Assembly (NCBI GenBank): GCA_044892525.1
Contig: CM097885.1
Location: 218,302,001 to 218,366,000, forward strand
Direction of reading: 5' to 3'
Origin: Schmidtea polychroa
Taxonomy: Eukaryota
Length of the DNA: 64,000 bases
Part shown: positions 16,676-64,000 of the stretch, one piece after another
How the letters are laid out: the number at the start of each line of letters is the position of its first letter
Numbering within the stretch: the stretch's first letter is position 1
Notes under the pieces: generated by a model
Told to the model about the DNA's origin: nothing
What the model saw: only the letters and a program-made list of their open reading frames with translations
The model's database searches: none
Translations under genes and position numbers: made by a program

Positions 16676-16883
16676 NNNNNNNNNNNNNNNNNNNNNNNNN
16701 NNNNNNNNNNNNNNNNNNNNNNNNNNNNNNNNNNNNNNNNNNNNNNNNNNNNNNNNNNNNNNNNNNNNNNNNNNNNNNNNNNNNNNNNNNNNNNNNNNNN
16801 NNNNNNNNNNNNNNNNNNNNNNNNNNNNNNNNNNNNNNNNNNNNNNNNNNTTCAAAGTGTCACTAATTAAAAGAGTTGAATAC

Positions 16884-30940: not shown

Positions 30941-32419
30941 NNNNNNNNNNNNNNNNNNNNNNNNNNNNNNNNNNNNNNNNNNNNNNNNNNNNNNNNNNNN
31001 NNNNNNNNNNNNNNNNNNNNNNNNNNNNNNNNNNNNNNNNNNNNNNNNNNNNNNNNNNNNNNNNNNNNNNNNNTCAGAGGTGAAAATCAAAGAACGCGCT
31101 ATACAAAATTGGAATGAAAATAAAGGTTAAAGGTATCCAATCGTACCATCTACAATAATTTGGTGAAACTTGAATACATAAATAATACATAAAAATTCCA
31201 TAATTAGACCAAATCAACAGACACCTGGAGAAATTCTTCAATGGTAAGTCTAACAAGTTCTGAGAGAATGGAACCGTAATTTTTTCTTTGAAACGTGTGA
31301 AGGTAAACATTTTGAAAGTTTTTAGATTCCGCTTAATTTACCTTTTCACTTAAATTTGACTGAAAGTCTATTGAAAATAATACTAATAAAAACGAATTAT
31401 GAAACTACGACGTGTTTATGTATTAAAATTAGTATGAAACTCGTCAAAGTCGAAGACGATAAAATAAACGTATAAAAATTAAGCAATCAACATATATTAA
31501 AATTATTCATTTTTTACTATGTTATTTTTATACTATTCATTTTTTATACTATTATACTATATGAGAGTGTATAGTATGAGTCAAAATTTTAAAACAGAAT
31601 AATATTTTATTGAAATCTTTTTCCCCACTGCCCCTTGATCACCTAGTATTTTTGTAAGCACTCTTGCTGCGTAACACCAGTTTATAACTTACAAATTATG
31701 TTTGTAATATTTGCAAGACAAATAATGACTAAATTTAATAATGTATATTATTATCTCTTGCTTTGCTATCTAAATTTGTATAATATTTGAGTAATGCAAC
31801 TCAGGTGCAACGCAAGCAGCGTAAAGTTAAAAATTTACATTTAAATGTCAGAATATATTTAAATGTTTATTAATTATTATGATTAATAAAAAATATTTTG
31901 TGCACCTTTCTGTTGTATTTCATTTGGTTTTGGAATAACTATGCTTTCAATCTTTTTTTCATTTCGAGCGAGACCTACACAAAATCATATATATTTAAAA
32001 TATAACATGTATAAGCGCAATTTAATAAATGCATGTACAGTAAAGTAAAATGTCCAAAGTTACAAAAAAACAAAATATCCATATAAAATTATAAATTTTA
32101 GGCTCTAGAAACTAAAAAATATAGTATAGGGAGGCAAACAGTTTAATTTTGACTTTTTCGTTTTAATGATTTTTCCGTGTCCCTAAAAATATGTTTGCCA
32201 CATTTGAATTGGATAAATTAATTTGGTTTTACTTATCTGATCCACAAAATAATCGGAATGATGACTATAAAACCTATACGGATATATGATTGATTCCTGA
32301 AACAGAACTAATACCTAAATTATAATACCAAAATAATACCAAAATTTATTTATAACAAACAAAATATTTTTTAAACCAATAATATCTTGCACAAGTTCCA
32401 TATTGGTTTTTTTATTCTA

Positions 32420-34560: not shown

Positions 34561-35837
34561 CACTTTGGGTTGATAATTTGAACTAAATTTATCAGTAGAA
34601 CAGGGATAAAAATCAGTTGCTTTGGTACATTCATTTGTCAATCACTCTGTGCCACCATGATAATCATAATTAGAAGAAGATTAAAAATCAATTAATAAAA
34701 GTTTTGTATTAAATATTTAAGAAAATTTTTATCATAATTTCAAGAGAAATATTAGATAAAATATTTCTAGTTTGCTGACATGAATTAATTTTTATTTTTT
34801 TTAACAGGCAATTATGTTAAGTGATTTTCCTGAGATGTATTTTATAAGTTTTAATAGTTTTATTATTATTATGTATTATTATTACAATTAATACTATTAA
34901 CACGTTAACATACAAAGCAGCTGTTGTCGTCATCCAAATTTCAAATTCGATGACATAAAGACTGTAGCAATTGTATATCCGAAATGGTATTGTGGCCAGA
35001 TGACTATAGCAGTCATAACATCATGAATTTCTATATATTGTGTCACAATACGAACTCCCTTTGAATATTTAGTGTCCTTCAGTGTGNNNNNNNNNNNNNN
35101 NNNNNNNNNNNNNNNNNNNNNNNNNNNNNNNNNNNNNNNNNNNNNNNNNNNNNNNNNNNNNNNNNNNNNNNNNNNNNNNNNNNNNNNNNNNNNNNNNNNN
35201 NNNNNNNNNNNNNNNNNNNNNNNNNCGTTATTATAATAGTAGCTATTTTAGTGAATAAAATACAATCCAGAATTAATATTTTATTTATTACAAGATTTAA
35301 TTTTTTTCTTTTCTTCTTCTGCTTCTGCATCTTGTTCTCCATTTTGAATATTGAATGTTTCTTTATTTTCCGTTATTTAAACAAACGTTTTTATATTATT
35401 TAAATATGTAGACGTAAGGCGAAGGCACTACAGCTATAACCGGTCAAATATGACGGAAGAATACTTTTTTTTAGAATGGTTTTCAAAAAATAATTTTATT
35501 TCCATTCAAAAGATCTTTAGTTAGGACATCTTTTATGTATGTTTTAGAATTTCATAGTGTCTATAAATTGTTATATTTCGTTCGAGCTATTCCAATATTT
35601 TAAAGTTCAGTTTAGTGAGATGGGTGTTCTTTGCCGTCAAGATTACGTAGCTAATAATGTAAGTAATTGCTGTGGGGATTCATGTTTCAAAATTGAGACA
35701 ATGTTTTATCTTCAATCACTTCCTTTGGAATCTCAATTAGCAGAAGATCAAAATCATAAATACTTTTTGTTGAATGGCAATTGCCAAAACATAATATCCA
35801 CTCCTTTCATTTATCTTGTCATGTGGAATGCATGTTA

Positions 35838-37608: not shown

Positions 37609-37914
37609 ATGAAAGCTATTGAACTTTATAACTTTAGCTCAAATGGATTTGATGATCTTTATGTTGTAAAAGGATCACAACTTGCGATTTTGAATATGGA
37701 CAGCGATCCTAATTGGTTTAAAGCTGAATGTGATAGTAAAACTGGACTGGTTTTAGCAAACTATAATAAAAGTTTTCAAGACTCCTCTAACCAATCTGTT
37801 CAACCTGTACCTTTACGTAATAATTATAAAACTCACGAAAAGGGATTTCTAATCAATTTAATTAATTCTGGTCACGCAGATTTTAGCAGTGAATTAGACA
37901 GTTATAATAATTAG
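37609..37914 (+). pseudogene. Isolated GRB2/Drk-like N-terminal SH3 ORF (101 aa)
   Basis: MKAIELYNF...DDL...ILNMDSDPNWFKAECDSKTGLVLANY parallels Drk [40 protein letters not shown]; no SH2 follows. Confidence 0.6.
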
Positions 37915-38444: not shown

Positions 38445-39011
38445 NNNNNNNNNNNNNNNNNNNNNNNNNNNNNNNNNNNNNNNNNNNNNNNNNNNNNNNN
38501 NNNNNNNNNNNNNNNNNNNNNNNNNNNNNNNNNNNNNNNNNNNNNNNNNNNNNNNNNNNNNNNNNNNNNNNNNNNNNNNNNNNNNNNNNNNNNNNNNNNN
38601 NNNNTATTTACTTTATCATTTGTATTATTTTTAGACATCATCGCACATTTTGTCGATAACAAATAATAAGCAGTTATTGTTTATAAAACCATCAATTCAG
38701 TTGATGTTGATTTACCATGAGCAACAAATTATATTTCAGACAGAAAGCTAAATTTTAACAATTAAAATTTTAGAAGTTTTTGAAATAACTTCTAAATCTT
38801 TTGAGAAATAAATACAAAAAAATTTACCAATAAGTTGTTACCATTTAATAAATTTAGTAATGAATATGAAATACTATTTGCAAATATACCAGATAATAGA
38901 GAAAAACAGTAGTTGTAAAGTTGTACAGTTTATCACTAATTAAGTGTAATAATTAAACAATGCAATTGTGATATTTGGAGTATTGTTGAGTATCGTCTTA
39001 CCACAACAACA

Positions 39012-42929: not shown

Positions 42930-45900
42930 TGCTTGAATTAATAAAGTTAGTAAATTAAATTATAAGTGTATAAATAACAGCAGATGAAAACAAATTTCCT
43001 TTATTTTTTACCCGATCAAAGAAATATAAAATTCTAAGTCAAAATAAATGGAATCAACACAAGGAATTTATCTTAAAAACTTTTGATTTGTAATATTTGC
43101 TTTATTTGCTTTATTTTTTAAAATCAAGTTTTTTTAAAAAATATTCTAAAAATCAATTTTAAAATAGTCTGCCGACCATTTGATTTTCATAGAATTTCTT
43201 CCCATTGCCATTGGATGCCATTGCAAACTTTACATGTGTTTATAGGGATTTGGTCACGAATACTATTGGTATTACTCCTACGTCTATCATTCAAGATATC
43301 TAATGTATTAATAAATTTGTTAAAATAGATACAACTATGACATTAAGCTTGAGACTATGTTACAATTAGAAATAGTATCGAATATTAAAGATTTTAATTT
43401 TAAATAAATACAGAAACCTTAATTTTTCAAAAAGAATATTACTAGATTAAATTAATAGCTAAAATTTATAATTAATTAGATTGGGTTAATAAAAACTATC
43501 AAATTGTGGTAGTAATTACCGCTTTATATGCTAAATACATGTTTGAAAAATTTTAGATATTTATATACAATGTATATTATATATATTCTAGCTGCTGACA
43601 CTTAATGGCGTTGTTTTAAAATAAATTCAAAATCATTACGTTTGCTTAATGTTAATAATAATTAATAATAAAGACAATAAATTATTATAAATTATAATTA
43701 AATCTCTAAATAAAGGCATCGATTTAAATATAAGTAAAAACGCCAATCCAATATATATTAAATTACAATATATTTCGACAGACTCAGTTTCATCATCAGG
43801 TAGAATTGCTCTTCTTCAAACAAGCTAATTCATTAGTTTTTTTAAATTATATTTTGCTAAAAAATCATAAAATTCTGTTTTCTGAATTCATATTTTTAAA
43901 AATTTCTCAAAGTTTTCACAAAATTGTGTTTACTAATATTAATCAACTCCTTCAGTCGATAGTGATCAAGAACTTGAGAACGGAGATGACGGGCAGTCAT
44001 TCCAGTATATGTGGTCTTACACCCGTGATATAAATATTAATAACCAAGATCCGAACCCAATCTAAGTAGGACTTGAAATTCACTAACAAACACGAAGTTA
44101 AAAAAACAGGAATTAGAAACCACCTTAGAACATTGAATACACAACTTCTTGTTTAAAATCTTTACACAAATTGTATAACATTCCAAGTACAAAAATGTAA
44201 ACCTAAACATAAAATTGTGCTAAATCGATGACGGGGAGTNNNNNNNNNNNNNNNNNNNNNNNNNNNNNNNNNNNNNNNNNNNNNNNNNNNNNNNNNNNNN
44301 NNNNNNNNNNNNNNNNNNNNNNNNNNNNNNNNNNNNNNNNNNNNNNNNNNNNNNNNNNNNNNNNNNNNNNNNNNNNNNNNNNNNNNNNNNNNNNNNNNNN
44401 NNNNNNNNNNNNNNNNNNNNNNNNNNNNNNNNNNNNNNNNNNNNNNNNNNNNNNNNNNNNNNNNNNNNNNNNNNNNNNNNNNNNNNNNNNNNNNNNNNNN
44501 NNNNNNNNNNNNNNNNNNNNNNNNNNNNNNNNNNNNNNNTTCGGCCGATCTTTCATGTGCGACTTGTGATCGGTTATGATATTTTTGTGTGTTTGCATGT
44601 GTGTGATGGGATTGTCTGATTCATAATCGTATTAATTCACAAAAGTTGTTGTGGTGGCTCGATTAATATTGATTTGGATTGTTCTTTGTTTGCAATTTTT
44701 ACTCGAACTTCTGAATTTTTTTTATCTTTGTGATTGTTTCAAATTTGTAAAATTTTTAAATTATTTTGGATATCAAGAAAGATGAATCAATTTTAATATT
44801 AATGTATAAACTTTAATAAATACAGAAAAGATAATGTCGATGAAGTATAAATCTAAGAATTTAATGAATTTCAACAGAACTTATAAAGATATGCATTTCA
44901 TATAATATCCTAGCAAATCTTTAACATTTTTTTGGAATTCTCATTGAACTATAATNNNNNNNNNNNNNNNNNNNNNNNNNNNNNNNNNNNNNNNNNNNNN
45001 NNNNNNNNNNNNNNNNNNNNNNNNNNNNNNNNNNNNNNNNNNNNNNNNNNNNNNNNNNNNNNNNNNNNNNNNNNNNNNNNNNNNNNNNNNNNNNNNNNNN
45101 NNNNNNNATTCTTCTTTACTTCATAATTCATTAAATTCTTCCATTAATATAATCGATAATTTTCCTTTATTTGTTTTGTTTTGCTTCGTATCAATTCACT
45201 TAAAAATAAAATATTGTATAAAAAGTTTTGATCTCCTTAAAAATAATATTTAAATTCATATTTAAAAGCTTTTATTACAAATTTAGATGAATTTATTTCA
45301 AAATCATTACGAGTTAAAATGCAAATTTTACTGTAAATAATATTTATATATCAACCTGATTTTTTCTGAACTGTAAATGTTATTTGGTCATAAGCTAAGC
45401 GGATTATGTCGCCAACGTTTAAAATTTTAAAATTATTTGCTTTGATTGGCTTTTCATTTATAAAAGTCTAAGATGATATTATTAAATTATAAAAAATAAT
45501 TTGTTCTCATACTCCATTCGATGTTTCTAGGTCTTTTATTTTAAGACTTTTATCTTTTTCGTTTATTAATAAAATACAGTGCTTGTAATCCACACTGTTT
45601 GACTAACAAACAGTTTATTAACATATTATAAACCCAAAATTAAAATACTTTCAGCTGAATGTCGCAATCTTTTCTTCCCAGAATTATTTTATTCTTATCA
45701 AAATAATACAACTTCCCAAATCTATCAGTTAGATACCATTCAAAGTGATTTTCTAGCATTATATGTAAAATAGATCTTTATTCCCAAATTTATTTTACAA
45801 ATAATAAATATTTAATTCAAAAAATAAACGTGAGTTTAGCATTAAAATCATATATTAAAACAATTCAAAAAGATCGATCTTATGATATTTAAAACTTAAT

Positions 45901-46246: not shown

Positions 46247-48684
46247 GGCTCCTAATTAAATGCAAACTAAATAATCCCATTTTGCACACTAAAAAATTAA
46301 CATTTGCTAACTATTTTTGCAAACTAAAAAATAATTTTTGCACACTATAAAATTGATTTTTGCTAACTATTTTTTGAAAACTAAAAAAATGATTTTTGCA
46401 CACTATTAAATACTTATTTGCTAACTATATTTTGGAAACTAAAAAAATGATTTTTGCACACTATAAAATCGATATTTGCTAACTATGTTCTGCAAACTAA
46501 AAAATAAATATTTGCACACTATTTTCAAAAATATTTATACATTATAAAATAAAAATTTCAGATATATTTCAATGAATAAAAAAGCATAGAGATTACAATT
46601 TATTGTTAATGCTTAAATACAACAATTTATAGACATTTAAAAAATGGTTTAACAAAATGTTTTGTATGATGGCTGCATTTTATTTGCACTAGATATAATA
46701 AATTTTTAGTTCTACTGCAACAGCAATGCTTTTCTTGCTTTTGCAGGGCGACCTCTCTTTCTTTTGGTTCCAATTGGAACATTTTTCGCTTAGGTTGGAG
46801 GGGCTACGAGCTTTAGTCGAATAGCTAATCCAACAATGTGTTTGCAAAGGATTTTTTTAAAAAAAGAAGGGCAGTTACAGTCTCCGTTAATCCAGTCATT
46901 TTGATCTTTTGGTAAAATAGTAGTCCATGAAAGAAATGCATTAATTTTAAACTCATCAAACGTTTCCCAGTTGTCATTTCCATCGTAGGTTTCTGTCAAA
47001 TCTTTTGCAGCAATTTTGTAAACAACACCACTCTCTGTTGATTCTGGAGAAATGGTTTTCTTCAACTTTGCCCACTGGTATGAGCTAGTCCAAAGTTCCA
47101 AGTCAATTTCTGGTTCGGTTTTGATGACTTTAATTCCAGATTCGTAATTGTTGGACCACCTTTCAATCCAATCAAACAATCCAACAGTAAATCTTGATAA
47201 TGAGACTCGCTCTCTCATAGAATCTTCATCTTTCATGACTCGGTTGTATGCCTCAAGGGCATTGTTTGTGCTAGGTGTTAGTTTTTTGGCACCTTCAAAC
47301 CAATTTTTATTTGATTTCAGCCATTCAGCTGTGAAGTATTCGACAAACTCCTTGTTTGCCTTCTACTTTTTCAAGAATAAAATTGATGCTTTTTCAAAAA
47401 CTTCTCTGGATTGACTGAGTTGCAAAGAATCAATATCAGACAAAATTTCCTGTCTTGCATCTTTTGGAATCAAAGAATCCACTTTTTTCTGAACATTTTT
47501 TTTCATATGAGCCCAGCACATAATCACCAATACGTTTTTGCCAAACACTGCTATGAAAGAGTTTTGGATGCTTTTTGATGCATCAGAAATTAATGTGCTT
47601 GGATTGAAGGGAGCATTGAAGATTTTAGGATCTTCATTCTTCAATGCAGTAAACAAAAATTTGAAGTCCTCAGTTTTTTCATCGGTGCGTACTCCAATAC
47701 CAAAACAATGAAACTGGCGATTGCGATCTGTTGTACCAATAACAAGAACAGGGAAGCCTTGCCATTGAAATGAAGTACCGGAAATATCCAGTGTCTTTAT
47801 ATTTAATTTCATATGCAACAACAAATGCTTTGTTATCTGCTTCTGGAACAGCTGAATGAATTTGCAACCACTGATTTAATTCTCCAAGGCTAATGATGTT
47901 GGCACCATATTTGGACTTTCTCAAGGATGCCAGATGATTATTCAGTTGTGTTTGACTTGGAAGGGGTAATTTTTCGTTAGACAAATGTTCTAACATTGCT
48001 TTTGGTTTCAATTTTAAAGCAAACAATTTGTCAATTTCAGCTTTGACGTATCTGTCATTGTTGTTCTTGTTTTGATGTTGTCACAATCATGTGCATGTCC
48101 TGATCTGTATAGAACAACATCACTAGTGCTGGACTCGTACCATAAGTAAATTGAGGCTGAACATTGTTCCCCACGAAATTTAACACGATTACAGCGGAAA
48201 AACCTCTTTTTCCCCTCTTCAGTTTTATTTGTCCGAAAACAAGACCACACTTTTTCGTTTTTTACAAAATCCTCAGCTTCATTTGAACTTGCAAATGCAT
48301 TTGCTCTTTTCCAGTCTTTGCAAATTTTTTCCCTTCGAGTTTCAAGTTTTAAAACGTGTTCTTCATCTTCATTTCCTGAAGAACAGTATTCTGGAACAAA
48401 GTCAAACTCTGAATTTTTTTTAAATTCCACCATTGCTATAACGACAAAGAAGTATTTATTATGAATAAAACAAACTTAGTTAGAAAATAATTTATTTATA
48501 GTTAGCATTACTATTTATAGTTAGCAATTATTTATTATAGTTAGCTTTTATTTATTATAGTTTGCATTTATTATTTATAGTTAGCATTTATTATTTATAG
48601 TTATTTATAGTTAGCATTTATTATTTATAGTTAGCATTTATAGTGTGCAAATACATTAAAATAGTGTGCATTTAAATTGTAGCG
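46247..48684 (-). mobile_element. Mutator-like element (MULE), full length
   Basis: 9-bp TSD TTTATAAAA; imperfect termini GGCTCCTAATTAAATGC / GCATTTAAATTGTAGCG; subterminal tandem arrays at both ends. Confidence 0.88.
46790..48433 (-). pseudogene. MULE transposase with SWIM zinc finger, disrupted
   Basis: WQGFPVLVIGTTD...FH.FG, LISDAS, CWAHM, TNNALEAYN, CNCPSFFKKILCKH; two frameshifts (~48020, ~47800) and a TAG at ~47363. Confidence 0.9.
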
Positions 48685-49170: not shown

Positions 49171-50747
49171 TTAATAAGTTAATAGTGTTGCAAAAGCTAT
49201 TGCAATGAAACTTGCATTTCCATCAACAAAATGTTCTGGTAATGTATAAATAGGAATACCCGCTTTGTGGGCTGTTGAAATTAAATATCTCGAATTTTTT
49301 AATTTATCTTTATTTAAACAAGTCATGTCTACCATGCCAGGAGCTTTAGAATCTATAATAATGGCTAACAAATTGTCATCAACAATCGCTCTATCTGAGA
49401 ATGAATTAATTATTCCTTTGCGTTTTTTCTTTTTAATTTCACAATTTATTATGTCAACCATTTCTTTTGTATTTATTCCATCTTTAGCAAAATAGAATCT
49501 TATTATTTCTAATATAATTGACAGGATACTCGATTTATCAGCATCAGCCAGCTTTTCGGCGTCCAAATTCTGGCAATTAAGAGAGAGCAATTGACAAAGT
49601 TTTATGATTTTCATGTTGTTGTGAACTCTTTGGGGATAAAATCTTTCCAAGTCAAAATTTAAAATAAATTTCATCCCACTTGTTATTCCCGGCTGAAGGA
49701 TTTCAAACATTTCACTAAAAATCCATCCGTTCCTACAGTCGGTTAACAGATGATTGGAAAACGGATATACATCAAACGAATTCAGAAAATTGCGACAAGT
49801 TAATTCTTCCAAACACTCGCCAGCGGCTCCGAATGATTTGGTCCGATGACTGGGATTGATTACAGGCAAGTCTCCATTGAAATAAATGAAAAGATATGAC
49901 ATGGTACTAATATGCAACTTGCAAGAACTCTCTCTTCGCTTATGTCCATTCAGTAAATCATCTTCAGTTAAAAAACTTTCAATATTTAATACTATTAAAT
50001 TACTGATAATATCTCTCGCTCTTGTCTCAACACATTTTTCATTGCTTATAGTCATGGGATCTGTCATTTTCATCCGTAGATTCACTGGAGCGACCCGATA
50101 TGTCAAATGACCGTAAAGTAAGCAGTCTTTGAAATCATCATCGAAGTCATTAATGAAATGGCGAAGCCCACTTTTAGACAAATGTAAATTGACATATCTC
50201 AATACTATATCGGATGGACTGAGCTCCTTCAAATCATCTATAGATTCATTAATTTTTTTAAGATCTACAATTTCTGGATGATGATAAATGTTGATTTGAT
50301 TAAAAAATCCTATCCGTATTATTTGCCATATTGTGTCTAAAATTGTAAATTTGTTTCCAGCCATTATTTCATTAATATCCACATTGCCCATATTGCCACC
50401 GCGACATCTGGCGGCATTTAACATTAAGCATAAATTATCCATTTTTTGTGAATAGGTCTTGGATAGGTCCTCTCCCCTATTTATTGCTCGTTCATCAATT
50501 GATTCCGGCAAAGATACTTGGACTAATTTACATAACAGAAAACCATCCTGAAGTTTATCATATAGGTCATCATTATATGGATCTATTGGTAAGTATAAAC
50601 TGGAATCTTTATCATCTGCAAGAATTTTATTAATCCATTTACAATAGGCCCGTCGTTCTGATTCTTCGTGAATCTAAAGAATATTCAAATAGGCTTTAAC
50701 AACTAATAAATTACCGAAAAATGTTTTTGAAGACTTTTTGCTGACAT
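49171..50747 (-). CDS. fim: Divergent fimbrin/plastin, 511 aa, four CH domains, no EF-hand headpiece
   Basis: Exon 1 50747-50715 (MSAKSLQKHFS), 41-nt GT-AG intron, exon 2 50673-49171. Encodes EESERRAYCKWINKIL...DGFLLCKLV...PESIDERAIN, WQIIRIG, RNFLNS, NSRYLISTAHKAG..YTLPE. In-frame TAA immediately precedes the ATG. Confidence 0.88.
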
Positions 50748-54310: not shown

Positions 54311-54833
54311 CAAATATTATAATAGTACATTTAAACATAATTAATAGTCACAAATATCAATTAATGAATTGTTGTAAGTTGATTAATAGTCACATAAAGA
54401 TTGTGATATTACAATAATTATTTACAAATATATTTTACAGTGACATAACTTTTATATTTTCCACGCTGTTGTTGTTGATGATTAAAGCATGCAAAGTGTT
54501 AGATCCATATGTCAATTTAATATTTCACCCACAAACCGCTACAAATTCAAATTTATTGCACCAATGTGAAAATGTCCATCTAAAATTTGATTTCACTGTA
54601 GCCTTAGAATTGTCGATTTCTCTAAGTTTCAAAATATTTTGTACCATTTGTTTGAAAATAAATTTTATTTCTAAATTTTCATTTTATTTTATTTAAATCT
54701 TGTATAATAGAATTATTTCAATTTAGCCTATTTCATTTAATGCTATTTAATGCTATTTATATATTTATTGAAGATAAAATATTAATCATTAATTTATTTT
54801 TATCATAACACATTTATTTAGATACTTCGCCAT

Positions 54834-56725
54834 TCAATCATCATGAACAGCCCAAAATCGTTTGAAATGATTACCATGTCTTTTATTCCAACTTCTTTTT
54901 CTTTTTTCCTCTTCAGATTCAAATTCAAGTGTTGCTTTTGGGTCATTTAATGCTGAAAAAATATATTTAAGATATAGTATTCAGTGAAGTATCATAAACA
55001 TACTGCACAAGCTATTTTTACACGAAGTGCCTTGGGGACATTTTGAACAAGCTGAACCAACTTCATAAGGAGCTTCTTCGCCGAAATTACCTCTTAAATT
55101 TAGAAAGTTACAATCAACATATTAATAATTAGGATAATCATAATGAATAGAATGAAAAGAATATCAATACTACAACNNNNNNNNNNNNNNNNNNNNNNNN
55201 NNNNNNNNNNNNNNNNNNNNNNNNNNNNNNNNNNNNNNNNNNNNNNNNNNNNNNNNNNNNNNNNNNNNNNNNNNNNNNNNNNNNNNNNNNNNNNNNNNNN
55301 NNNNNNNNNNNNNNNNNNNNNNNNNNNNNNNNNNNNNNNNNNNNNNNNNNNNNNNNNNNNNNNNNNNNNNNNNNNNNNNNNNNNNNNNNNNNNNNNNNNN
55401 GTAAAATATTTTCTTACGGATGTCTAACATTGAAGTACGATAAACATTACAAGCTTTGTGATACCCAGTTCTTGTCAATTTTCTTGAAAAGGAAATTTGG
55501 AAGGGTTATCTTATAGTCGAAAATTTTTTCATTTGTATTAAATATATAATTCGCAGCATTAGGCTTAAATTATCATTTNNNNNNNNNNNNNNNNNNNNNN
55601 NNNNNNNNNNNNNNNNNNNNNNNNNNNNNNNNNNNNNNNNNNNNNNNNNNNNNNNNNNNNNNNNNNNNNNNNNNNNNNNNNNNNNNNNNNNNNNNNNNNN
55701 NNNNNNNNNNNNNNNNNNNNNNNNNNNNNNNNNNNNNNNNNNNNNNNNNNNNNNNNNNNNNNNNNNNNNNNNNNNNNNNNNNNNNNNNNNNNNNNNNNNN
55801 NNNNNNNNNNNNNNNNNNNNNNNNNNNNNNNNNNNNNNNNNNNNNNNNNNNNNNNNNNNNNNNNNNNNNNNNNNNNNNNNNNNNNNNNNNNNNNNACATA
55901 ACTAGTATTTAAACTTACGCAGGTCCATAATTACAAATAAACAACCATCCATATGGAAATGTACCGAAGGTTTTTTCTTGGCAATTTACAGCAGCACAAC
56001 CCACTGCATAGCTTTTTGCCCAAGCGACCTTTATAATATATAATTAAAGAAAAATAAATTAAATATGAAATTAATTTCAATTCACTTGAGTACATTTCTT
56101 ATGAAATTTTTAAACTTTTTCATTGCAATTTTGAAATCATTTTTATAAAATTAAAATTAAAAACTATGAACTCAAATTTGAAATAAAAACTATTTTACAT
56201 AAACAAAATTTTGTTTTTACCTGAGTATAATGTCCACAAACAGCAGAACAATCTTTACCTTCATATGAGTAATCTTTATATTCATCGTACCACCCTTGAA
56301 CGACACTGAAAATTTTCAACACAAAAATGAAAAGTTAAAAAAATATTTGCAAGGTTTATACTCTTTGTAATTTGAACCCGCAAACATATTTTGACCAACA
56401 AACATAAATTTATTCAATTGCCTATCATCATATGTATCGTGTCCAGCAATGCATGAACTGGCCCAGCCTTCAGCTTTTTCAGCCAAAGCATCATCCCAAA
56501 CCTTTAAATTAGTTTAGACAAAGATATATTTTTATTATATTAGACAAAAATATTTACCATTTCAATCATGTTTGCAGCAGCTGGTTGATTGGGTGTTTGG
56601 CCAAGAGCAACTTTTCGTCTTAAATCATTATGAGCTTTGAGTAAAAATTCCTTGTATTCTGGAGGGGTAGATGATATCAAAGTGAATGTAATTCCATATA
56701 CAAAATAATAAAGTAGATATTTCAT
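54834..56725 (-). CDS. Secreted CAP/SCP (antigen-5/venom allergen-like) protein A, 236 aa, six exons
   Basis: Exons 56725-56558, 56501-56362, 56305-56221, 56028-55919, 55092-55004, 54952-54834 splice in frame. Signal peptide, HNDLR, GQNM, WYDE, GHYTQVAW, FICNYGPAGN, Cys hinge; tail KRKR-SWN-KR-HGNHF-KR-FWAVHDD*. Confidence 0.92.
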
Positions 56726-56793
56726 TTTCTAATTTTTGGAATTACGATTTAAAATAATAATTATATTTTATACTCATGCTTCACCAAGTTTAT

Positions 56794-56823
56794 GGAAATT
56801 AAAAAGGAAATTGCTATTTAATT
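56794..56823 (-). promoter_or_regulatory. Conserved upstream motif of CAP-A
   Basis: Plus strand GGAAATT-5nt-GGAAATT-G.TATTTAATT, 70-100 bp upstream of the ATG; near-identical arrangement upstream of CAP-B. Confidence 0.5.
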
Positions 56824-58429
56824 TGTTTAAATTGTATTTTTCATTTATATTCATGAGTGTATGGGAAATTTATTAATTAATAATTGCTTACAAAGAATAA
56901 CTGGTATTTTATATAATTTTTTTCTATGATCTTATAGTGAAAAATANNNNNNNNNNNNNNNNNNNNNNNNNNNNNNNNNNNNNNNNNNNNNNNNNNNNNN
57001 NNNNNNNNNNNNNNNNNNNNNNNNNNNNNNNNNNNNNNNNNNNNNNNNNNNNNNNNNNNNNNNNNNNNNNNNNNNNNNNNNNNNNNNNNNNNNNNNNNNN
57101 NNNNNNNNNNNNNNNNNNNNNNNNNNNNNNNNNNNNNNNNNNNNNNNNNNNNNNNNNNNNNNNNNNNNNNNNNNNNNNNNNNNNNNNTTTATAATTCGGA
57201 AGATTAAAACAGCTAGTGTAACTCCACATGCTCTTGAACAACTAATAATCAACACAATTAACTTTTAATATTATATCATTTCAAAATCTTTCGAATTCTG
57301 TTTGCCTCATCATTTGCCATCCGATCATACCAGTTTCCCCCTAATTTTATTCACTTCAATTATTATTTTTTAAATTTTGTTAAATTTTATATTTACTGTA
57401 GTGTAACGTTTTTTTAAATGTAATTATGAATTGTAATCATTATTTTTATTCGGGGCATATCCTTCGCAAACCAATAAAAAGGTATTATATAGTGATTCTC
57501 TATACTATAGAGTCTATAGTAATAATTTACTATTGAGAAATAACAAATTTTAAAAATTCAATAGAAAAAATTTAAAAAATTAAAAGTTGTACAGTGGCTA
57601 AGCTGATCAAAGAAGTCGCAACGAATATTTATTAAAGGTACTTTCGTAGAAATTTTAAAGGAGAAAGAAACTACATTGCTATAATATCTACTATATCAAT
57701 ATAGTATCAGAAAGATCAGGTAATCTGAAAGTTAAAGAAGAAATTATCCAATCTTAGAAAGTGCTTGGAACACCAAATTGTTCAGAGTTTTATAAATTAC
57801 GATTCTTAATTGAATCTTTTACCTCAATTAATAACTGGTTGTATCGTGATCAATCCTAACCCCTTACAGTTCTTCTCAGGCAATTGTTCTTCCAATTACC
57901 AGCATAACATCCATTGTAAATAATAGACTGAACCACTGTTCGCTGTCGATATTATAAAGTATTTTATTTTTTCGTTAATAAAGTGGTAATTTTTATTAAC
58001 TGTTAATCTCTACTATCATTATACATATAAGCATCCGGTTGTCCCGACACTTTTTACTGGTGACTCTACCGGGTGTTTCAAATTTTCTTAACATATTAAC
58101 GGATTATTTTACCGAAAAATATTTAAAAACTCACAATATTTACTATTTTGCAAATTGATTTCTGTACATTTAAACTTTATCTTGCAATAATCTAGACAAC
58201 CCCAACATTATTATTATAAGGAAGTACCACACAAACATGCATTTTACGATGTCTTTAAACAGTTTTCTTGTCATCATCAGGTAGAAGAGAAAAAAACTAG
58301 ATATTATTGATTTAATAAACAATTTAAACAATTATTAATAAATTATTAATAATTTTTTTAATTTTAAAAATATATTTAATTTAATTTAAATAATTAATTA
58401 TTTTTTCAATTTTTACTATTTTTAATAAA

Positions 58430-58563
58430 ATATTTGTTTAATGAATTTGCAAAAGTGTGTATAAATTGATAGAGTTATTGATGAAGAATGGGTCATTCTT
58501 AAATCATTCTTAAAAATGACGAGAAATTTATTGATTCACGTCAGTTTATTAAGGATTCATTGG
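58430..58563 (+). repeat. Direct repeat copy 1 (~134 bp)
   Basis: Nearly identical to 59633-59764. Confidence 0.9.
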
Positions 58564-58639
58564 CTATGCCAGTAAAAACTACAATTTTTTTACGATTAAC
58601 ATCAAATATGTTGATAACGTTAGATTGAGGTGTAGATTT

Positions 58640-59110
58640 GTAATTTTTAAGCAAATATATGAATAAAAGGACTGAAAATTAGGATAATATCAGATTAATA
58701 TACAAAATTTATAACTTGTACTCAAATATATGAATAGGAGGACTTTAGTTTAGGGTGATGTTAGATTAATATATAAAAATTATAACTGGTAATTTTTTTT
58801 CAAATACCTAGATAAAAGGACTTGAGATAAGGGTAACATTAGATTAATGTGCAGTTGCAGGGTGATTATAAGACTTATAATTTGTAATTTTAAACAAATA
58901 TATGGATAAAAAGACTGAAAGTTAGGATAATATCAGATTAATATACAAAATTTATAACTTGTACTCAAATATATGAATAGGAGGACTTTAGTTTAGGGTG
59001 ATGTTAGATTAATATATCAAAATTATAACTGGTAAATTTTATCAAATACATGAATAAAAGGACTTAAAATTAGGATAACATTAGATTAATATACAGTTTG
59101 AAGGGTGAAT
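58640..59110. repeat. Minisatellite of ~65-80 bp units with ~250-bp higher-order repeat
   Basis: Recurrent ATAAAAGGACT..TTAGGATAA.ATTAGATTAATAT; 58660-58800 nearly repeated at 58910-59050. Confidence 0.8.
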
Positions 59111-59152
59111 TTAAGTAGATTGTAAATTGTTGTTCTTGAGTTGCGTATATCC

Positions 59153-59500
59153 CAGGCCTGTTTAACCTTTTTGGGACTTCGGGCCATAAAAATAATGTTG
59201 AATCTTCCGCGGGTCACACATATATTAATATTAAAAAAATACATACATAAGTTTTGAAACCAATTTTTAATTTATTTTATATATTAAAATATCACATAAA
59301 ATGAATTATACATAAACGTCATAAACCGATTTATCAACACAAAAATCAAATTAATACTTTGTTAAATTAAAATTAATGCGATTTTTGAAATTACTTATTT
59401 TGCATTACATTGCTTACTGAAGGATTTATACCGCTAAGCGCTAAGTGCAGTGGATTTCTCAAATGTTTATCGGTTCAGTTTATTAATATGTTTACATAAC
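59153..59500 (-). mobile_element. hAT (Buster/Charlie-type) 3' fragment
   Basis: Terminus CAGGCCTGTTTAACCTTTT...GGGCCA; minus strand TDKHLRNPLHLA...K*FQKSH*, typical Buster C-terminus. Confidence 0.7.
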
Positions 59501-59632
59501 TATGATAAAAGATAATAGCATGATCTGAATACATCATAAAAATATTTTAAAAAAATAAAAAATAAATAAAAAATTTAAAAAAAAAAGTAAAATTCGGGTG
59601 GAGGGGACCCTTAGCTTTTTATATATAGAGAG

Positions 59633-59764
59633 ATATTTGTTTAATGAATTTGCAAAAGTGTGTATAAATTGATAGAGTTATTGATGAAGAATGGGTCATC
59701 TAAATCATTCTTAAAAATGACGAGAAATTTATTGATTCACGTCAGTTTATTAAGGATTCATTGG
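59633..59764 (+). repeat. Direct repeat copy 2 (~132 bp)
   Basis: Differs from 58430-58563 mainly by a 2-nt indel. Confidence 0.9.
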
Positions 59765-59913
59765 TTATGAATTGAAAATATGTCTTTGAATTTTGAAGAA
59801 TAATACATTTTTGTTGTTGTATAATAGTACAAGATACTTTGTTAAAATTTATATAAGCTAGTGTGCCATGGGATCTGGTTCTCGTTAAAACATGACTGTA
59901 GTTTATGTTTAAA

Positions 59914-59995
59914 AAAATTGACTTTGAATCAGTAAAGATATTGATGTTTTTTTGATATTCACGAATTTTCAACACAGCCTTTTTCACTTGAAAGT
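59914..59995 (+). repeat. Degenerate left arm of hammerhead hairpin family
   Basis: AAAAAATTGAC...GATGTTTTTTTGATATTCACGAATTTTCAACACAGCCTTTTTCAC. Confidence 0.65.
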
Positions 59996-60919
59996 TCTCA
60001 TAATTAAAATTTAGAAAACATTCTATAAATTAACTAAATTTTTCTATTTAGAATAGTTGATGTTTTGGAAATATTAGAAATACTTTCATAAATATTCATT
60101 TATATTATTATTAAATTTAAAATTAGGGACTTAATGGTCATAATCAATGTTAAAATGTGTGTATTTTTTTATTATCTATTTTGTAAACCGTACTTATATT
60201 TATTTAGTAATGTTTTTCTTCATTAATTTCTACTAGTCTCTTTTATGATAAAGTCTCAACTTTGTCTCCGAGACCCCCCATTTATTATAGATTGGTTTAA
60301 TTTTTATTACTAAACAACTTCATTAACCTCATTAGGGATGAAGTTAGTCAATCAAAACTGGAATAATTATGTAATAAATAGAATAAAATTTTTATTATCC
60401 AATTGATATAAATAGAGATTAATACTGTTTCATAATTTTAATCTTTTCATGCATAAATTATTTTGTAATAATATTTTTTCTCACATCACTTGAGAACTTG
60501 GTTATTATTTTTGAGAAAACACATAAAACATCATTAAATTGATTCTTTATAATGTTTCATTATCATTAAAATGACTTCGTTTAAACAAATAAATAAATTT
60601 TCAAAAATTGAATTATGACTCTTCTCTTATTGAGACATCATGCATGAAAAAATATAATTAAGTCTGATTAATAAATGAAAATAAAATCTAATTGAATTAT
60701 TTTAACATTTAAAATTCTTATAGAATCAACTTCTCAAAAATATTAAAATAAATAGTTAATTTACAGAATGAAAATTCATAACAATGAAAATAAAATTTTG
60801 ATCAAGTCAATTACTGAGAAACAAATCAAAGACGGATGCTTTATTATATTATTAATAATGCTTTATCAGAAATTTTTCAAATAAATTAATGTTCACAGAA
60901 TAATCCAACTTCCGTTCAA

Positions 60920-61952
60920 TTAGTGATGGCCAGCATGTCGCTTGTGATGTCCAGCATGTCGTTTGTGATGTCCGGCGTGTCGTTTATGGTGACCCTTATG
61001 TCTTTTCCTTCTTTTCTCTTCATCGAATTCCAAAGTAGCTTTTGGGTCATCCAAGGCTGGTGAAATGAAAAAATACATATTAATCCGTAGTATCAAAAAC
61101 AATATATTGAAATTATTACCACAGAGATTGTTTTTACACGATGTTCCTTTAGGACATTTTGAACAGGCGGCTCCGACTTCATATGGAGCTTCATCATTGA
61201 AATTTCCTCTAAAAAATATTCCAATAAAAATATTTTTCCTCAATAATATCTTACGCTGGTCCATAATTGCAAATAAATAACCATCCGTATGCAAATGAAC
61301 CACCAGTTTTTTCTTTGCAGTTCACGGCCGCGCAACCAACTGCATAACTTTTTGCCCAGGCAACCTGAAATTAGTTAAAATTTAATACATTTTAGGAATC
61401 AACTCTTTTTGATTGCTTAAACAAACAAATTGGAATAATATTTACTTGTGTATAATGGCCACAAACTGCTGAACAACCTTTACCTTCAAAAGTGTAATCT
61501 TTATATTCATCATACCATCCTTGAACCACTCTTAATTTATAAAGATAAACCATTGTTCATAACTGATAATAAAGATTTTACTCTTTATAATTCGATCCAG
61601 CGAACATATTCTGACCAACGAACATAAATTTGTCGAGTGCTCTATCATCATAAGTATCATGTCCAGCAATACATTTTCCAGCCCATTCTTCAGATTTACC
61701 GGCAAGTGCGTCATCCCAGACCTAATAAAAGTTTTATTACATTTAAAATTTCTCATCATAAATAAAGCCTCGTAATAATTATACCATTTCAATCATGTTT
61801 GCGGCACCTGGTTGATTCGGAGTTTTACCCAAAGCAACTTGTCTTCTCAAATCATTATGGGCTTTCAGAAGAAATTCTTTGTATTCAGGAGGAGTTCCAA
61901 CTGTTAGAGTAGCTAATATACAAGAAATTACTCCACAAAGCAATAGCTTCAT
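60920..61952 (-). CDS. Secreted CAP/SCP protein B, 242 aa, six exons, His-rich repeat tail
   Basis: Exons 61952-61785, 61721-61582, 61530-61446, 61364-61255, 61208-61120, 61056-60920; same exon sizes and phases as CAP-A for exons 1-5. Tail RRKR-HKGHH-KR-HAGHH-KR-HAGHH-KR-HAGHH*. Confidence 0.93.
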
Positions 61953-62017: not shown

Positions 62018-62046
62018 GGAAATTACAAGGAAATTGGTATTTAATT
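62018..62046 (-). promoter_or_regulatory. Conserved upstream motif of CAP-B
   Basis: Plus strand GGAAATT-4nt-GGAAATT-G.TATTTAATT, 65-95 bp upstream of the ATG. Confidence 0.5.
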
Positions 62047-63332: not shown

Positions 63333-64000
63333 GGATGTGTCACCACTGGCACATGTCACCTCTGGCACACTACCCCGGGGGGGGGGGGGTAAACGAAAAA
63401 TTTTTTTTCAAGGTCAAATTTTAAACAAAGACATATGACTCATCAAGGTCATTGAAACAAAGACCATGACTCATCATATGACTCATCAAGGTCATTGAAA
63501 CAAAGACCATGACTCATTCAAGGTCAAAGGATGACTCATAGAGGCCATTGAAACAAAGACCATGACTCACTCAAGGTCATATGATGACTCATCAAGGTCA
63601 TATTTTAAAGGTCAAGGGCATAATTTTAAAGGCCAAGGTCATATTTTTAAAGGTCAAGGTCATATTTTTAAGGTCAAGGTCATATTTTTTAAAGGTCATG
63701 GTCATATTTTTTAAGGTCAAGATCATATTTTTAAGGTCAAGGCCATATTTTAAAGTCAAACCTTCACCAAAGGGTATCATTCGAAAGGTATTTGAGAGGT
63801 CTATCTAATGGTCATACCCTCAAAGGTGTATGGTGGGTCCTCGGCCTTCAAAGGGTCAAAAACCTTCGAATTTTTTCAAACTTTATCATATATATATCAT
63901 TCGAAAGGTATTTGAGAGGTCTATCTAATGGCTATATCCTCAAAGGTGGGTCAATAACCTTCAAAGGGTGTCCAAAATTAAATATTTTTAAAACCATACA
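63333..64000 (+). mobile_element. Non-autonomous element with internal TGACTCA/TCAAGGTCA tandem arrays (runs off window)
   Basis: Starts GGATGTGTC, G-tract, ~35-45 bp repeats with TGACTCA (63430-63600), ~20-bp AAGGTCAAGGTCATATTTTT repeats (63600-63760), duplicated ~45-bp block at 63775 and 63895. Confidence 0.65.

What the first reader, a model, noticed from the sequence alone, without database searches (positions are those of the whole stretch)
54834..61952. CAP proteins fused to prohormone-like cassettes of KR-delimited short peptides
Seen: after the CAP domain, Cys hinge and a conserved acidic spacer (L.DPKATLEF.E), both paralogues have a furin-type site (KRKR or RRKR) followed by peptides separated by KR. 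CAP-A gives SWN, HGNHF, FWAVHDD; CAP-B gives HKGHH and HAGHH x3. The dibasic sites and an H-x-x-H-x pentamer are retained while the peptides diverge. Known: KR and RxKR are prohormone convertase/furin sites, and CAP proteins are secreted lipid- or metal-binding proteins common in venoms and parasite secretions. Inference: a secreted CAP carrier co-delivering cleavable His-rich metal-binding, antimicrobial or signalling peptides, an architecture I do not recognise as described.
Basis: partly seen in the sequence, partly recalled or inferred. Interest (0 to 1): 0.85.

Follow-up and report, generated by a model that had tools for sequence, protein, structure and literature searches.

The report
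Two CAP genes with KR-punctuated tails
Two neighbouring, intact genes for secreted CAP-family proteins each end in an unusual short tail: an acidic spacer, a furin-type basic site and small segments separated by Lys-Arg pairs. The tail looks functional and cleavable, but nothing yet shows that it is cut or what the pieces do.

Summary
On the minus strand lie two six-exon CAP genes: CAP-A (54834-56725, 236 aa) and CAP-B (60920-61952, 242 aa). They share GT-AG introns at identical positions and phases.

The N gaps do not touch coding sequence. Two lie in intron 4 of CAP-A and one lies upstream of its ATG. Physical continuity of CAP-A is not proven.

This is not chance. In the six-frame translation of the window, only these two tails have 3 or more KR per 30 aa. 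The paralogues are old (synonymous sites saturated, CAP dN/dS about 0.05), yet the spacer and KR pairs persist. CAP-B's H-x-G-H-H-K-R heptads differ only by synonymous changes.

- KR spacing is not conserved between paralogues (3/5/7 against 5/5/5/5).
- CAP-B's triple HAGHH is a 21-nt tandem duplication.
- There is no amidation signal, and the searches found no relative of the tail.
- Cleavage is untested, and a retained His/Lys/Arg-rich binding tail fits the sequence almost as well.
- CAP proteins that release C-terminal peptides are already known (plant PR-1/CAPE).

Verdict: a new variant of a known kind, of moderate interest.

The parts
54834..56725 (-). CAP-A gene, ATG to stop, six exons, 236 aa. 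Exons: 56725-56558, 56501-56362, 56305-56221, 56028-55919, 55092-55004, 54952-54834.
   Evidence: All junctions are GT-AG and the joined frame is open. It is 87% identical to CAP-B over residues 20-208. It aligns collinearly with arthropod CAP domains at E 1e-40.
55177..55895 (.). Two N gaps (55177-55400 and 55579-55895) with a 178-nt island between them, all inside intron 4 of CAP-A.
   Evidence: The exon 4 donor at 55918 and the exon 5 acceptor at 55093 are intact. No CAP-like coding was found in the island by tblastn. Continuity across the gaps is not testable.
56947..57187 (.). N gap upstream of CAP-A, 221 nt before its ATG.
   Evidence: It is non-coding for CAP-A but may hide distal promoter sequence.
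54834..54952 (-). CAP-A exon 6: acidic spacer (54906-54952), multibasic KRKR (54894-54905), tail SWN/KR/HGNHF/KR/FWAVHDD (54837-54893) and stop (54834-54836).
   Evidence: An AATAAA signal lies at 54813-54818.
60920..61952 (-). CAP-B gene, ATG to stop, six exons, 242 aa, no gaps. Exons: 61952-61785, 61721-61582, 61530-61446, 61364-61255, 61208-61120, 61056-60920.
   Evidence: E 8e-39 to a Blattella CAP domain, collinear across every exon junction.
60920..61056 (-). CAP-B exon 6: acidic spacer (61016-61056), multibasic KRRKR (61001-61015), heptad array (60923-61000) and stop (60920-60922).
   Evidence: An AATAAA signal lies at 60840-60845.
60923..61000 (-). Heptad array H-x-G-H-H-K-R: HKGHH-KR, HAGHH-KR, HAGHH-KR, HAGHH.
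   Evidence: Tandem Repeats Finder reports period 21, 3.0 copies and 90% matches at 60923-60985. Differences among the three HAGHH units are all synonymous. Unit 1 differs from the others by synonymous changes (3-4 per comparison) plus one replaced codon.
56794..56823 (-). Conserved upstream block of CAP-A holding two AATTTCC half-sites, about 70-100 nt before the ATG.
   Evidence: Local alignment score 43 against maxima of 40 and 37 in about 2800 random window segments. The paired motif occurs only at the two CAP promoters in the 64 kb.
62018..62046 (-). The same conserved upstream block for CAP-B, about 66-94 nt before the ATG.

Best explanation
These are two old tandem paralogues of a secreted single-domain CAP protein (CAP domain plus four-Cys hinge, no ICR/ShKT domain) from an AT-rich animal genome, probably an arthropod. 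A lineage-specific last exon adds a C-terminal module made of a conserved acidic spacer (core DPKATLEF plus a Glu/Asp run), a multibasic site (KRKR or KRRKR), and a short basic tail in which every further basic position is an ordered Lys-Arg pair.

The most likely mechanism is that a furin/kexin-type proprotein convertase cuts at the multibasic site in the secretory pathway. That would separate an acidic CAP body (net charge -8 to -11) from a small cationic tail. In CAP-B that tail is a 26-residue piece that is 46% His. Where a KR-specific convertase and a carboxypeptidase are also present, it could be cut further into HKGHH and three HAGHH. CAP-A would give SWN, HGNHF and FWAVHDD.

Shown: the gene models, CAP membership, the tail anatomy, its non-random KR pattern, and purifying selection on the spacer and the heptads. 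Inferred: secretion, cleavage at the first site, further cleavage at the internal KR pairs, and any activity of the pieces. Metal chelation by the His-rich CAP-B pieces is the most natural guess.
For: - Gene models are intact with shared intron positions and phases. Exons 1-5 align collinearly with CAP domains of arthropod proteins across every junction.
- CAP motifs CAP1, CAP2 and CAP3 match exactly, and the hinge has four Cys.
- CAP dN/dS is about 0.05 with saturated synonymous sites, so both copies have long been kept.
- The spacer is 82% identical with pS 0.84, so exon 6 is translated in this frame.
- The multibasic site sits at the same position in both proteins, directly after a net -5 spacer.
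- KR order is strict. All 4 K and 4 R of the CAP-A tail form KR pairs (P = 5.5e-5). In the CAP-B tail every Arg follows a Lys or an Arg-Lys context.
- These tails are the only places with 3 or more KR per 30 aa in the whole six-frame translation, and there is no KR in the CAP bodies.
- The CAP-B heptads differ by four independent synonymous changes and no replacement (P 0.002-0.006). Unit 1 keeps H, G, H, H, K and R through synonymous differences (3-4 per comparison).
- Established knowledge: R-X-K/R-R and KR are convertase sites, and dibasic KR is a used propeptide cleavage motif in arthropod peptide precursors (PMC6468893).
- A shared upstream block suggests the two genes are regulated together.
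Against: - There is no transcript, proteomic or peptidomic evidence, so exon 6 splicing rests on conservation alone.
- No orthologue of the tail was found. The only close relatives are two exon-1 fragments whose DNA could not be read.
- The segments are very short and lack an amidation Gly.
- Segment lengths and sequences differ between the paralogues.
- The triple HAGHH is one duplication event, not three independent retentions.
- A His-, Lys- and Arg-rich tail could work uncleaved.
- Selection on the heptad is expected equally for a repeat that binds something.
- CAP-A has Lys rather than Arg at P4 of its first site, which is a weaker furin motif.
Confidence: 0.45

Rival explanations
1. The tail is retained. 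It stays on the mature protein and acts as a cationic, histidine-rich binding module. It could bind divalent metals, or bind polyanions or membranes in a pH-dependent way, either tethering the acidic CAP body to a surface or feeding metal to the CAP cavity. On this reading the KR pairs are simply the basic part of a repeat.
For: - The CAP-B tail has 12 His in 26 residues and net charge +7.
- It arose by in-frame 21-nt tandem duplication, the usual origin of low-complexity binding repeats.
- Selection on the heptad fits a binding repeat as well as a cleavage cassette.
- The literature describes histidine-rich C-terminal tails as metal ligands in unrelated proteins (PMC10170517).
Against: - The CAP-A tail is not His-rich (3 His in 19 residues, net +2) yet keeps the KR pairs.
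- A purely electrostatic role would not require strict K-then-R order or a canonical multibasic site right after an acidic spacer.
- An exposed R-R-K-R in a secreted animal protein is normally cut (established knowledge of furin specificity).
- The tail matches no Pfam family and no solved structure.
Confidence: 0.3
2. The tail is a C-terminal propeptide only. It is removed at the multibasic site, and the fragments have no function of their own. The spacer and tail serve folding, sorting to granules or keeping the protein inactive until release.
For: It rests on the same cleavage-site evidence as the best explanation. The tail segments diverge strongly between the paralogues. The segments are very small and lack maturation signals.
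Against: A discarded propeptide would not be expected to keep the HAGHH units identical at protein level through four synonymous changes, nor to keep the internal KR pairs in both paralogues.
Confidence: 0.12
3. The tail is a nuclear-targeting signal. If the animal delivers these proteins into another organism's cells, the KRRKR or KRKR cluster would act as a classical nuclear localisation signal.
For: The basic clusters fit the general K-K/R-x-K/R form. A fungal CAP effector that localises to the plant nucleus has been described (PMC8544888).
Against: Nothing here shows a parasitic or injecting lifestyle or entry into host cells. The repeated KR pairs and His units downstream are not needed for an NLS. 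The same cluster is a convertase site that would be exposed to convertases during secretion.
Confidence: 0.05
4. The tail is not a real feature. Exon 6 would be a mis-predicted exon or a neutral low-complexity extension, or CAP-A would be an assembly chimera.
For: There is no transcript evidence. Two gaps of unknown true length lie between exons 4 and 5 of CAP-A. The genome is AT-rich, with many AAA and AGA codons.
Against: - The acceptor position and phase are conserved in both genes.
- The 8-residue core is identical despite saturated synonymous sites.
- Polyadenylation signals follow both stops.
- No other place in the window has this KR density.
- CAP-B has no gap at all and shows the same architecture.
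Confidence: 0.05

Closest known systems
Plant PR-1 and its CAPE1 peptide, and the smut-fungus PR-1-like protein that releases a CAPE-like peptide (PMC10189770, PMC10505147)
   Same: A secreted CAP-domain protein acts as the precursor of a C-terminal peptide freed by an endoprotease. Both window proteins even carry the CNYx + PxGNxxxxxPY signature.
   Different: In PR-1 the released peptide is the last strand of the CAP domain itself, cut after CNYx by cysteine or serine proteases. Here that motif is internal and is followed by a hinge. The candidate peptides lie in an added exon behind an acidic spacer and are bounded by dibasic convertase sites. There are several of them rather than one.
Kex2-processed repeat proteins (KEPs) and the yeast alpha-factor precursor (PMC6339444, PMC7329392)
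   Same: [quoted passage not shown] CAP-B has four such units.
   Different: KEPs are fungal, are mostly just the repeats, and by definition the repeats take up at least 15% of the protein. Here a 190-aa folded CAP domain dominates and the repeats make up 8-12%. CAP-A has KR-bounded segments but no repeats, and the host is an animal.
Animal prohormone and venom multi-peptide precursors with dibasic or PQM sites (PMC6468893)
   Same: An acidic propiece is followed by a basic cleavage site and small peptides. KR is the site, and an acidic residue lies within four positions before the first Arg.
   Different: Those precursors lack a large conserved globular domain of independent function, and many of their peptides end in Gly for amidation. 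Here none does, and the peptides match no known family.
CRISP, antigen 5 (Ves v 5) and GLIPR1-type CAP proteins (PDB 1qnx, 1rc9, 3q2r; PMC11209345)
   Same: The CAP domain has the CAP1-3 motifs and a hinge of about 20 residues with two disulfides. The best exon-wise PDB matches are Ves v 5, a snake CRISP and GLIPR1.
   Different: There is no ICR/ShKT domain after the hinge as in CRISPs. There is no Cys-bearing N-terminal segment as in the arthropod relatives retrieved. There is no transmembrane end as in GLIPR1. The KR-punctuated tail takes that place instead.
Poly-His-poly-Gly peptides of viper venom (PMC12108757)
   Same: Small histidine-rich peptides that are genetically encoded in a secreted precursor and act on metalloproteinases through their His residues. 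This is a possible model for what HAGHH-type pieces could do.
   Different: There is no sequence relationship, the precursor is different, the His runs are much longer, and the taxon differs. This is a functional analogy only.

Membership tests
CAP superfamily (Pfam PF00188) | Signature motifs CAP3 HNxxR, CAP4 G[EQ]N[ILV], CAP1 and CAP2, as given in PMC11209345 | tested here: met
   A regular-expression test on both spliced proteins matched CAP3 (HNDLR), CAP1 (11-mer at residue 127) and CAP2 (12-mer at residue 160) exactly. CAP4 is GQNM, one residue off the pattern.
CAP superfamily (Pfam PF00188) | Significant match to the family profile or to members over the whole domain | tested here: met
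   Exon-wise Pfam hits to CAP are collinear (profile positions 17-57 and 91-117), but each falls below the 21.1-bit cut-off because only single exons could be submitted. The spliced proteins align over residues 25-204 with CAP domains of a Blattella protein at 42-43% identity, E 1e-40 and 8e-39. Exon-wise PDB hits are Ves v 5, CRISP and GLIPR1.
CRISP subfamily | Hinge with four Cys followed by an ICR/ShKT domain with six Cys | tested here: not met
   The hinge is present (Cys 183, 186, 192, 197). No Cys follows it, and the C-terminal exon has no Pfam or PDB match.
Arthropod antigen-5 type CAP | Cys-bearing N-terminal segment before the first CAP helix, as in the retrieved arthropod relatives | tested here: not met
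   Alignments to the arthropod relatives begin at residues 23-25. The mature N-terminus is at about residue 20, and there is no Cys before residue 73 of the mature chain.
Prohormone / multi-peptide precursor | Signal peptide, and peptides each flanked by dibasic convertase sites | tested here: met
   The N-termini are hydrophobic (mean hydropathy 0.98 and 2.02 for residues 2-19). A multibasic site and KR pairs bound every segment. No signal-peptide predictor was available, so the signal peptide is inferred.
Prohormone / multi-peptide precursor | Maturation signals (C-terminal Gly for amidation) and peptide sequences conserved in other species | tested here: not met
   No segment ends in Gly. 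No relative of the tail was found in the 5.8-billion-protein collection or in the metagenome contigs. The two paralogues share only one H-x-x-H-x-K-R unit.
Prohormone / multi-peptide precursor | Demonstrated cleavage products and expression in secretory cells | not testable with these tools
   No expression or proteomic data are available for this genome.
Kex2-processed repeat proteins (KEPs) | Signal peptide, at least 3 near-identical repeats with KR/RR/KK between them, and repeats covering at least 15% of the protein (PMC6339444) | tested here: not met
   CAP-B has 4 units separated by KR, but they cover 20-28 of 242 residues (8-12%). CAP-A has no repeats. The host is an animal: a Grb2/drk-type SH3 exon is present and the nearest CAP relatives are arthropod.
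PR-1/CAPE system | CNYx followed by PxGNxxxxxPY at the extreme C-terminus, released by cleavage after CNYx | tested here: inconclusive
   The motif is present in both proteins, but it is followed by about 70 more residues (hinge, spacer, tail). Cleavage there cannot be tested. The motif overlaps the general CAP2 signature, so its presence alone says little.
Known histidine-rich peptide or protein families | Sequence match to a curated family or a solved member | tested here: not met
   There was no Pfam family at E <= 1 and no PDB chain at E <= 10 for the tail exons. I had salivary histatins and histidine-rich glycoprotein in mind, and neither came back as a hit.

The most novel reading that the evidence does not exclude
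An animal CAP protein that doubles as a multi-copy peptide precursor. Convertases would free a set of tiny His-rich peptides (HKGHH and HAGHH x3) or aromatic peptides (SWN, HGNHF, FWAVHDD) that act on their own, for instance as metal chelators, metalloprotease modulators or antimicrobials, and are co-secreted with the CAP body. That would be an animal counterpart of plant CAPE release combined with a KEP-like cassette. The heptad copy number could then evolve by 21-nt slippage.
Probability: 0.2. Interest if true: 0.7.

Novelty: new variant of a known kind. Interest (0 to 1): 0.45.

Why it matters
[quoted passage not shown] The one well-established signalling route in the family, peptide release from plant PR-1, has no accepted animal counterpart.

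A CAP gene pair whose added last exon carries a canonical convertase site and a selected, repeated peptide unit gives a concrete, checkable case. If the native protein lacks the tail and the small peptides are present, the peptide-carrier idea would extend to animals. It would also show how a short tandem duplication can build a peptide cassette on a folded carrier.

If the tail is retained, this is instead a clean example of a natural His-rich, metal- or polyanion-binding appendage on a CAP domain. Either way the finding is descriptive for now and rests on one genome.

Tried and rejected
1. Finding full-length relatives.
- The 127-aa open frame spanning exon 5, intron 5 and exon 6 of CAP-B found nothing.
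- Exon 1 against 1.84 billion representatives gave seven hits. Only one was close: a 61-aa exon-1 fragment, P0001.
- A profile of exon 1 added a second fragment, P0008, from the same ENA sample.
- DNA for both fragments was unavailable.

2. Tail relatives. A profile of the two exon-6 translations found nothing in the protein collection or in the metagenome contigs. Exon-1 scans of metagenome, prokaryote-genome and viral contigs were also empty.

3. Identifying the genome. Exact look-ups of the CAP-B exon-1 ORF and of the 765-aa ORF were not on record, and Rfam found nothing. The taxon is narrowed only to an animal, probably an arthropod.

4. Further paralogues. A tblastn of both proteins against the window found only the two genes.

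5. Composition as an explanation for the KR pairs. This is rejected by the six-frame scan.

6. Recent duplication as the whole explanation for the conserved units. This is rejected because the units differ at synonymous sites only, and unit 1 is old.

7. Pseudogene or mis-assembly. This is unlikely given dN/dS of about 0.05 and the intact CAP-B.

8. Literature on convertase processing of vertebrate CAP proteins. The search returned nothing usable, so that remembered lead is not used.

9. Full-length Pfam scan, full-length PDB search and AlphaFold model of the spliced proteins. These were left out because no reference exists for a spliced protein.

Full report
**What is there**

The window is AT-rich (about 19-42% GC in 2-kb steps, mostly 23-31%) and full of transposon-like fragments. 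On the minus strand of 54834-61952 lie two genes of identical structure.

- CAP-A runs from the ATG at 56725 to the stop at 54834 and encodes 236 aa.
- CAP-B runs from 61952 to 60920 and encodes 242 aa.
- Each has six exons, and every intron starts GT and ends AG.
- Intron positions and phases are the same in both genes.
- Intron lengths for A/B are 56/63, 56/51, 192/81, 826/46 and 51/63 nt.
- A tblastn of both proteins against the whole window finds no third copy.

I joined the predicted exons only inside the sandbox, to test the splice model.

**The assembly gaps, tested first**

Gaps 55177-55400 and 55579-55895 both fall in intron 4 of CAP-A.

- Exon 4 ends at 55919 with a GTAAGT donor, 23 nt from the gap.
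- Exon 5 begins at 55092 behind an AG, 84 nt from the other gap.
- The join reads NYGPAGNF, the same as in gap-free CAP-B and in a cockroach relative.

No coding residue is missing and the frame is independent of gap length. The third gap (56947-57187) lies 221 nt upstream of the CAP-A start codon. Physical continuity of CAP-A exons 1-4 with exons 5-6 cannot be shown from the window. CAP-B has no gap and shows the same architecture, so the finding does not depend on CAP-A. I did not try to fill any gap.

**Are they CAP proteins?**

Yes.

- The published signature motifs (PMC11209345) were tested by pattern. CAP3, CAP1 and CAP2 match exactly in both proteins. CAP4 reads GQNM, one residue off.
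- The hinge has four Cys, and the mature chain has ten Cys in all.
- Exon-wise Pfam hits to PF00188 are collinear but individually below threshold, since only single exons could be submitted.
- Exon-wise PDB matches are Ves v 5, a snake CRISP and GLIPR1.
- The spliced proteins align over residues 25-204 with each CAP domain of a Blattella germanica protein at 42-43% identity (E 1e-40 and 8e-39). The alignment is collinear across all exon junctions, which also validates the splice model for exons 1-5.
- There is no ICR/ShKT domain after the hinge and no Cys-bearing N-terminal segment, so they are neither classical CRISPs nor classical antigen-5 proteins.
- The N-termini are hydrophobic, so a signal peptide is inferred.

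**The tail**

Exon 6 begins one residue after the last hinge Cys. The layout of each tail is as follows.

| Element | CAP-A | CAP-B |
|---|---|---|
| Spacer | core DPKATLEF plus Glu/Ser run, net -5 | same core plus Asp/Glu run, net -5 |
| Multibasic site | KRKR | KRRKR |
| Segments | SWN, KR, HGNHF, KR, FWAVHDD | HKGHH, KR, HAGHH, KR, HAGHH, KR, HAGHH |

Polyadenylation signals follow both stops.

**Is it more than chance?**

- In all six reading frames of the 64 kb (17,255 stop-free 30-residue windows), the only places with three or more KR dipeptides are these two tails. AT-rich codon composition therefore does not explain them.
- Shuffling the CAP-A tail gives P = 5.5e-5 for all four Lys being followed by the four Arg.
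- CAP-B with its duplicated units collapsed gives P = 0.013.
- The CAP bodies contain no KR at all.

**Is the tail under selection?**

The paralogues are old. Synonymous sites are saturated (pS 0.64-0.84) while the CAP domain is 88% identical, with dN/dS about 0.05.

Against that background the spacer is 82% identical, with an invariant eight-residue core. Exon 6 is therefore translated in this frame and is constrained.

The CAP-B array is a 21-nt tandem repeat, so its three HAGHH units are copies by descent and not independent retention. The copies have since diverged at four nucleotide positions, all synonymous (P about 0.002-0.006 for four of four). The older first unit differs from the others by synonymous changes (3-4 per comparison) and one replaced codon, keeping H, G, H, H, K and R. 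The heptad is therefore kept by selection.

Between the paralogues, only one H-x-x-H-x-K-R unit and the multibasic site are alignable. Segment lengths differ (3/5/7 against 5/5/5/5). The 'conserved KR spacing' of the finding holds within CAP-B only.

**Relatives elsewhere**

This was the weakest part of the work.

- Exon 1 against 1.84 billion representatives gave seven hits. The only close one is a 61-residue exon-1 fragment. A profile search added a second fragment from the same ENA sample, ERZ27256860. Another organism therefore also has at least two such genes, but its DNA could not be read.
- The far hits are multi-domain CAP proteins of a cockroach, krill and ticks. Their ends carry no KR cassette.
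- The tail exons found nothing in the protein collection, in metagenome contigs, in Pfam or in the PDB.

The host is an animal: a Grb2/drk-type SH3 exon lies at 37609 onward. The nearest annotated CAP relatives are arthropod.

**How it most likely works**

A canonical R-R-K-R (or K-R-K-R) sits directly behind a strongly acidic, conserved spacer. It lies in what is surely an exposed C-terminal extension of a secretory protein, and that is the classical setting for furin/kexin-type cleavage.

I therefore think it most likely (0.45) that the tail is detached in the secretory pathway. This would leave an acidic CAP body plus either one cationic His-rich piece or, where KR-specific convertases act, the small segments. 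Strict K-then-R order at every further basic position favours recognition by a protease over a mere charge effect.

The main rival (0.30) is a retained His/Lys/Arg-rich tail that binds metal or polyanions. It explains CAP-B well and CAP-A poorly. Lesser rivals are a propeptide with no function of its own (0.12), a nuclear signal used in another organism's cells (0.05) and a mis-modelled or neutral extension (0.05). None of the cleavage steps is shown.

**Comparison with what is known**

- CAP proteins that release a C-terminal peptide are known in plants (PR-1 to CAPE1) and in a smut fungus (PMC10189770, PMC10505147). Both window proteins even carry the CNYx-PxGNxxxxxPY signature. There it is internal and overlaps the general CAP2 motif, so it says little.
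- KR-separated repeated peptides behind a signal peptide define fungal KEPs (PMC6339444). CAP-B meets the repeat and site criteria but fails the 15% coverage criterion, CAP-A has no repeats, and the host is an animal.
- Dibasic KR sites and Glu-containing quadruplets before Arg are used in arthropod venom peptide maturation (PMC6468893).
- Small encoded His-rich peptides that act on metalloproteinases exist in viper venom (PMC12108757). This is an analogy only.

My literature searches found no description of a CAP domain fused to a KR-punctuated cassette. Those searches cover open-access text only.

**Verdict**

The feature is real, non-random and selected. It is best classed as a new variant of known kinds: CAP proteins with variable C-terminal additions, and convertase-delimited peptide cassettes.

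In my private reasoning I twice recalled from memory a stretch of a known human protein, a salivary histidine-rich peptide and an SH3 adaptor. I stopped and used those letters in no tool call, script, note or conclusion. The likenesses were tested only with the window's own sequences.

**No referred steps**

The transposon-like elements of the window were only noted.

Noticed in passing
window 56794-56823 and 62018-62046: A conserved block of about 30 nt lies 66-100 nt upstream of both CAP start codons and contains two AATTTCC half-sites on the gene strand. It scores above every one of about 2800 random window segments, and the paired motif occurs nowhere else in the 64 kb. It is probably a shared regulatory element. 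The factor is unknown.
   Followed up: partly
window 61057-61119 (intron 5 of CAP-B): This intron is 63 nt long, in frame and free of stops, which creates the 127-aa ORF at 60920-61303. If it were retained, 21 mostly hydrophobic residues would be inserted before the spacer without breaking the frame. The matching intron of CAP-A contains a stop.
   Followed up: no
CAP-A and CAP-B residues 163-177 (exons 4/5; 55919-55931 + 55061-55092, and 61255-61267 + 61177-61208): Both proteins carry CNYG-PAGNFxxEAPY, which fits the plant CAPE signature (CNYx, PxGNxxxxxPY). Here it is internal and followed by the hinge.
   Followed up: partly
ENA sample ERZ27256860 (proteins P0001, P0008): Two exon-1 fragments, 59-63% identical to CAP-B exon 1, lie on two short contigs (1175 and 1191 nt) of one metagenome or assembly sample. 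These are the only close relatives found. Their DNA could not be fetched, so their tails are unknown.
   Followed up: partly
window 58417-59769: Between the two CAP genes, a 243-nt unit repeated twice (58636-59115, built of sub-repeats of about 71-81 nt) is bracketed by direct repeats of about 150 nt (58417-58568 and 59620-59769, 93-99% identical). It looks like a repetitive or mobile element.
   Followed up: partly
window 28143-30440 (+): An intact 765-aa ORF in a GC-rich island (42% against about 26% background) has no Pfam match and no exact record in the collection. It may belong to a recently arrived mobile element.
   Followed up: partly
window 46790-48433 (-): ORFs with a MULE transposase domain and a SWIM zinc finger are spread over several separate ORFs. 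This is a transposon-like element and was not analysed further.
   Followed up: no
window 49171-50511 (-): An intronless 446-aa ORF with three calponin-homology stretches is only weakly similar to plastin/fimbrin (139 bits to human plastin-3, 135 bits to an Arabidopsis fimbrin). It may be a diverged retrocopy.
   Followed up: partly
window 37609-37776 (+): An ORF whose first 56 residues align with residues 1-56 of GRB2 and Drosophila drk (N-terminal SH3 domain). It looks like the first exon of the Grb2 orthologue and marks the genome as animal.
   Followed up: partly
window 15086-15352 (-), 3430-3660 (+), 11480-11719 (+): Short ORFs that by eye resemble a helicase end of Helitron/Pif1 type, a DDE transposase and an integrase core. 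These are further transposon debris and were not tested with any tool.
   Followed up: no
window 63400-63800: A satellite-like array built on AAGGTCA/AGGTCAT units follows a run of G at about 63378-63390.
   Followed up: no
window, ten N runs (14754-14933, 16676-16850, 30941-31073, 35087-35225, 38445-38604, 44240-44539, 44956-45107 and the three in the finding): All gaps are 130-320 nt long and scattered through repeat-rich sequence. They look like masked or unresolved repeats rather than scaffold joins. They were left untouched.
   Followed up: no
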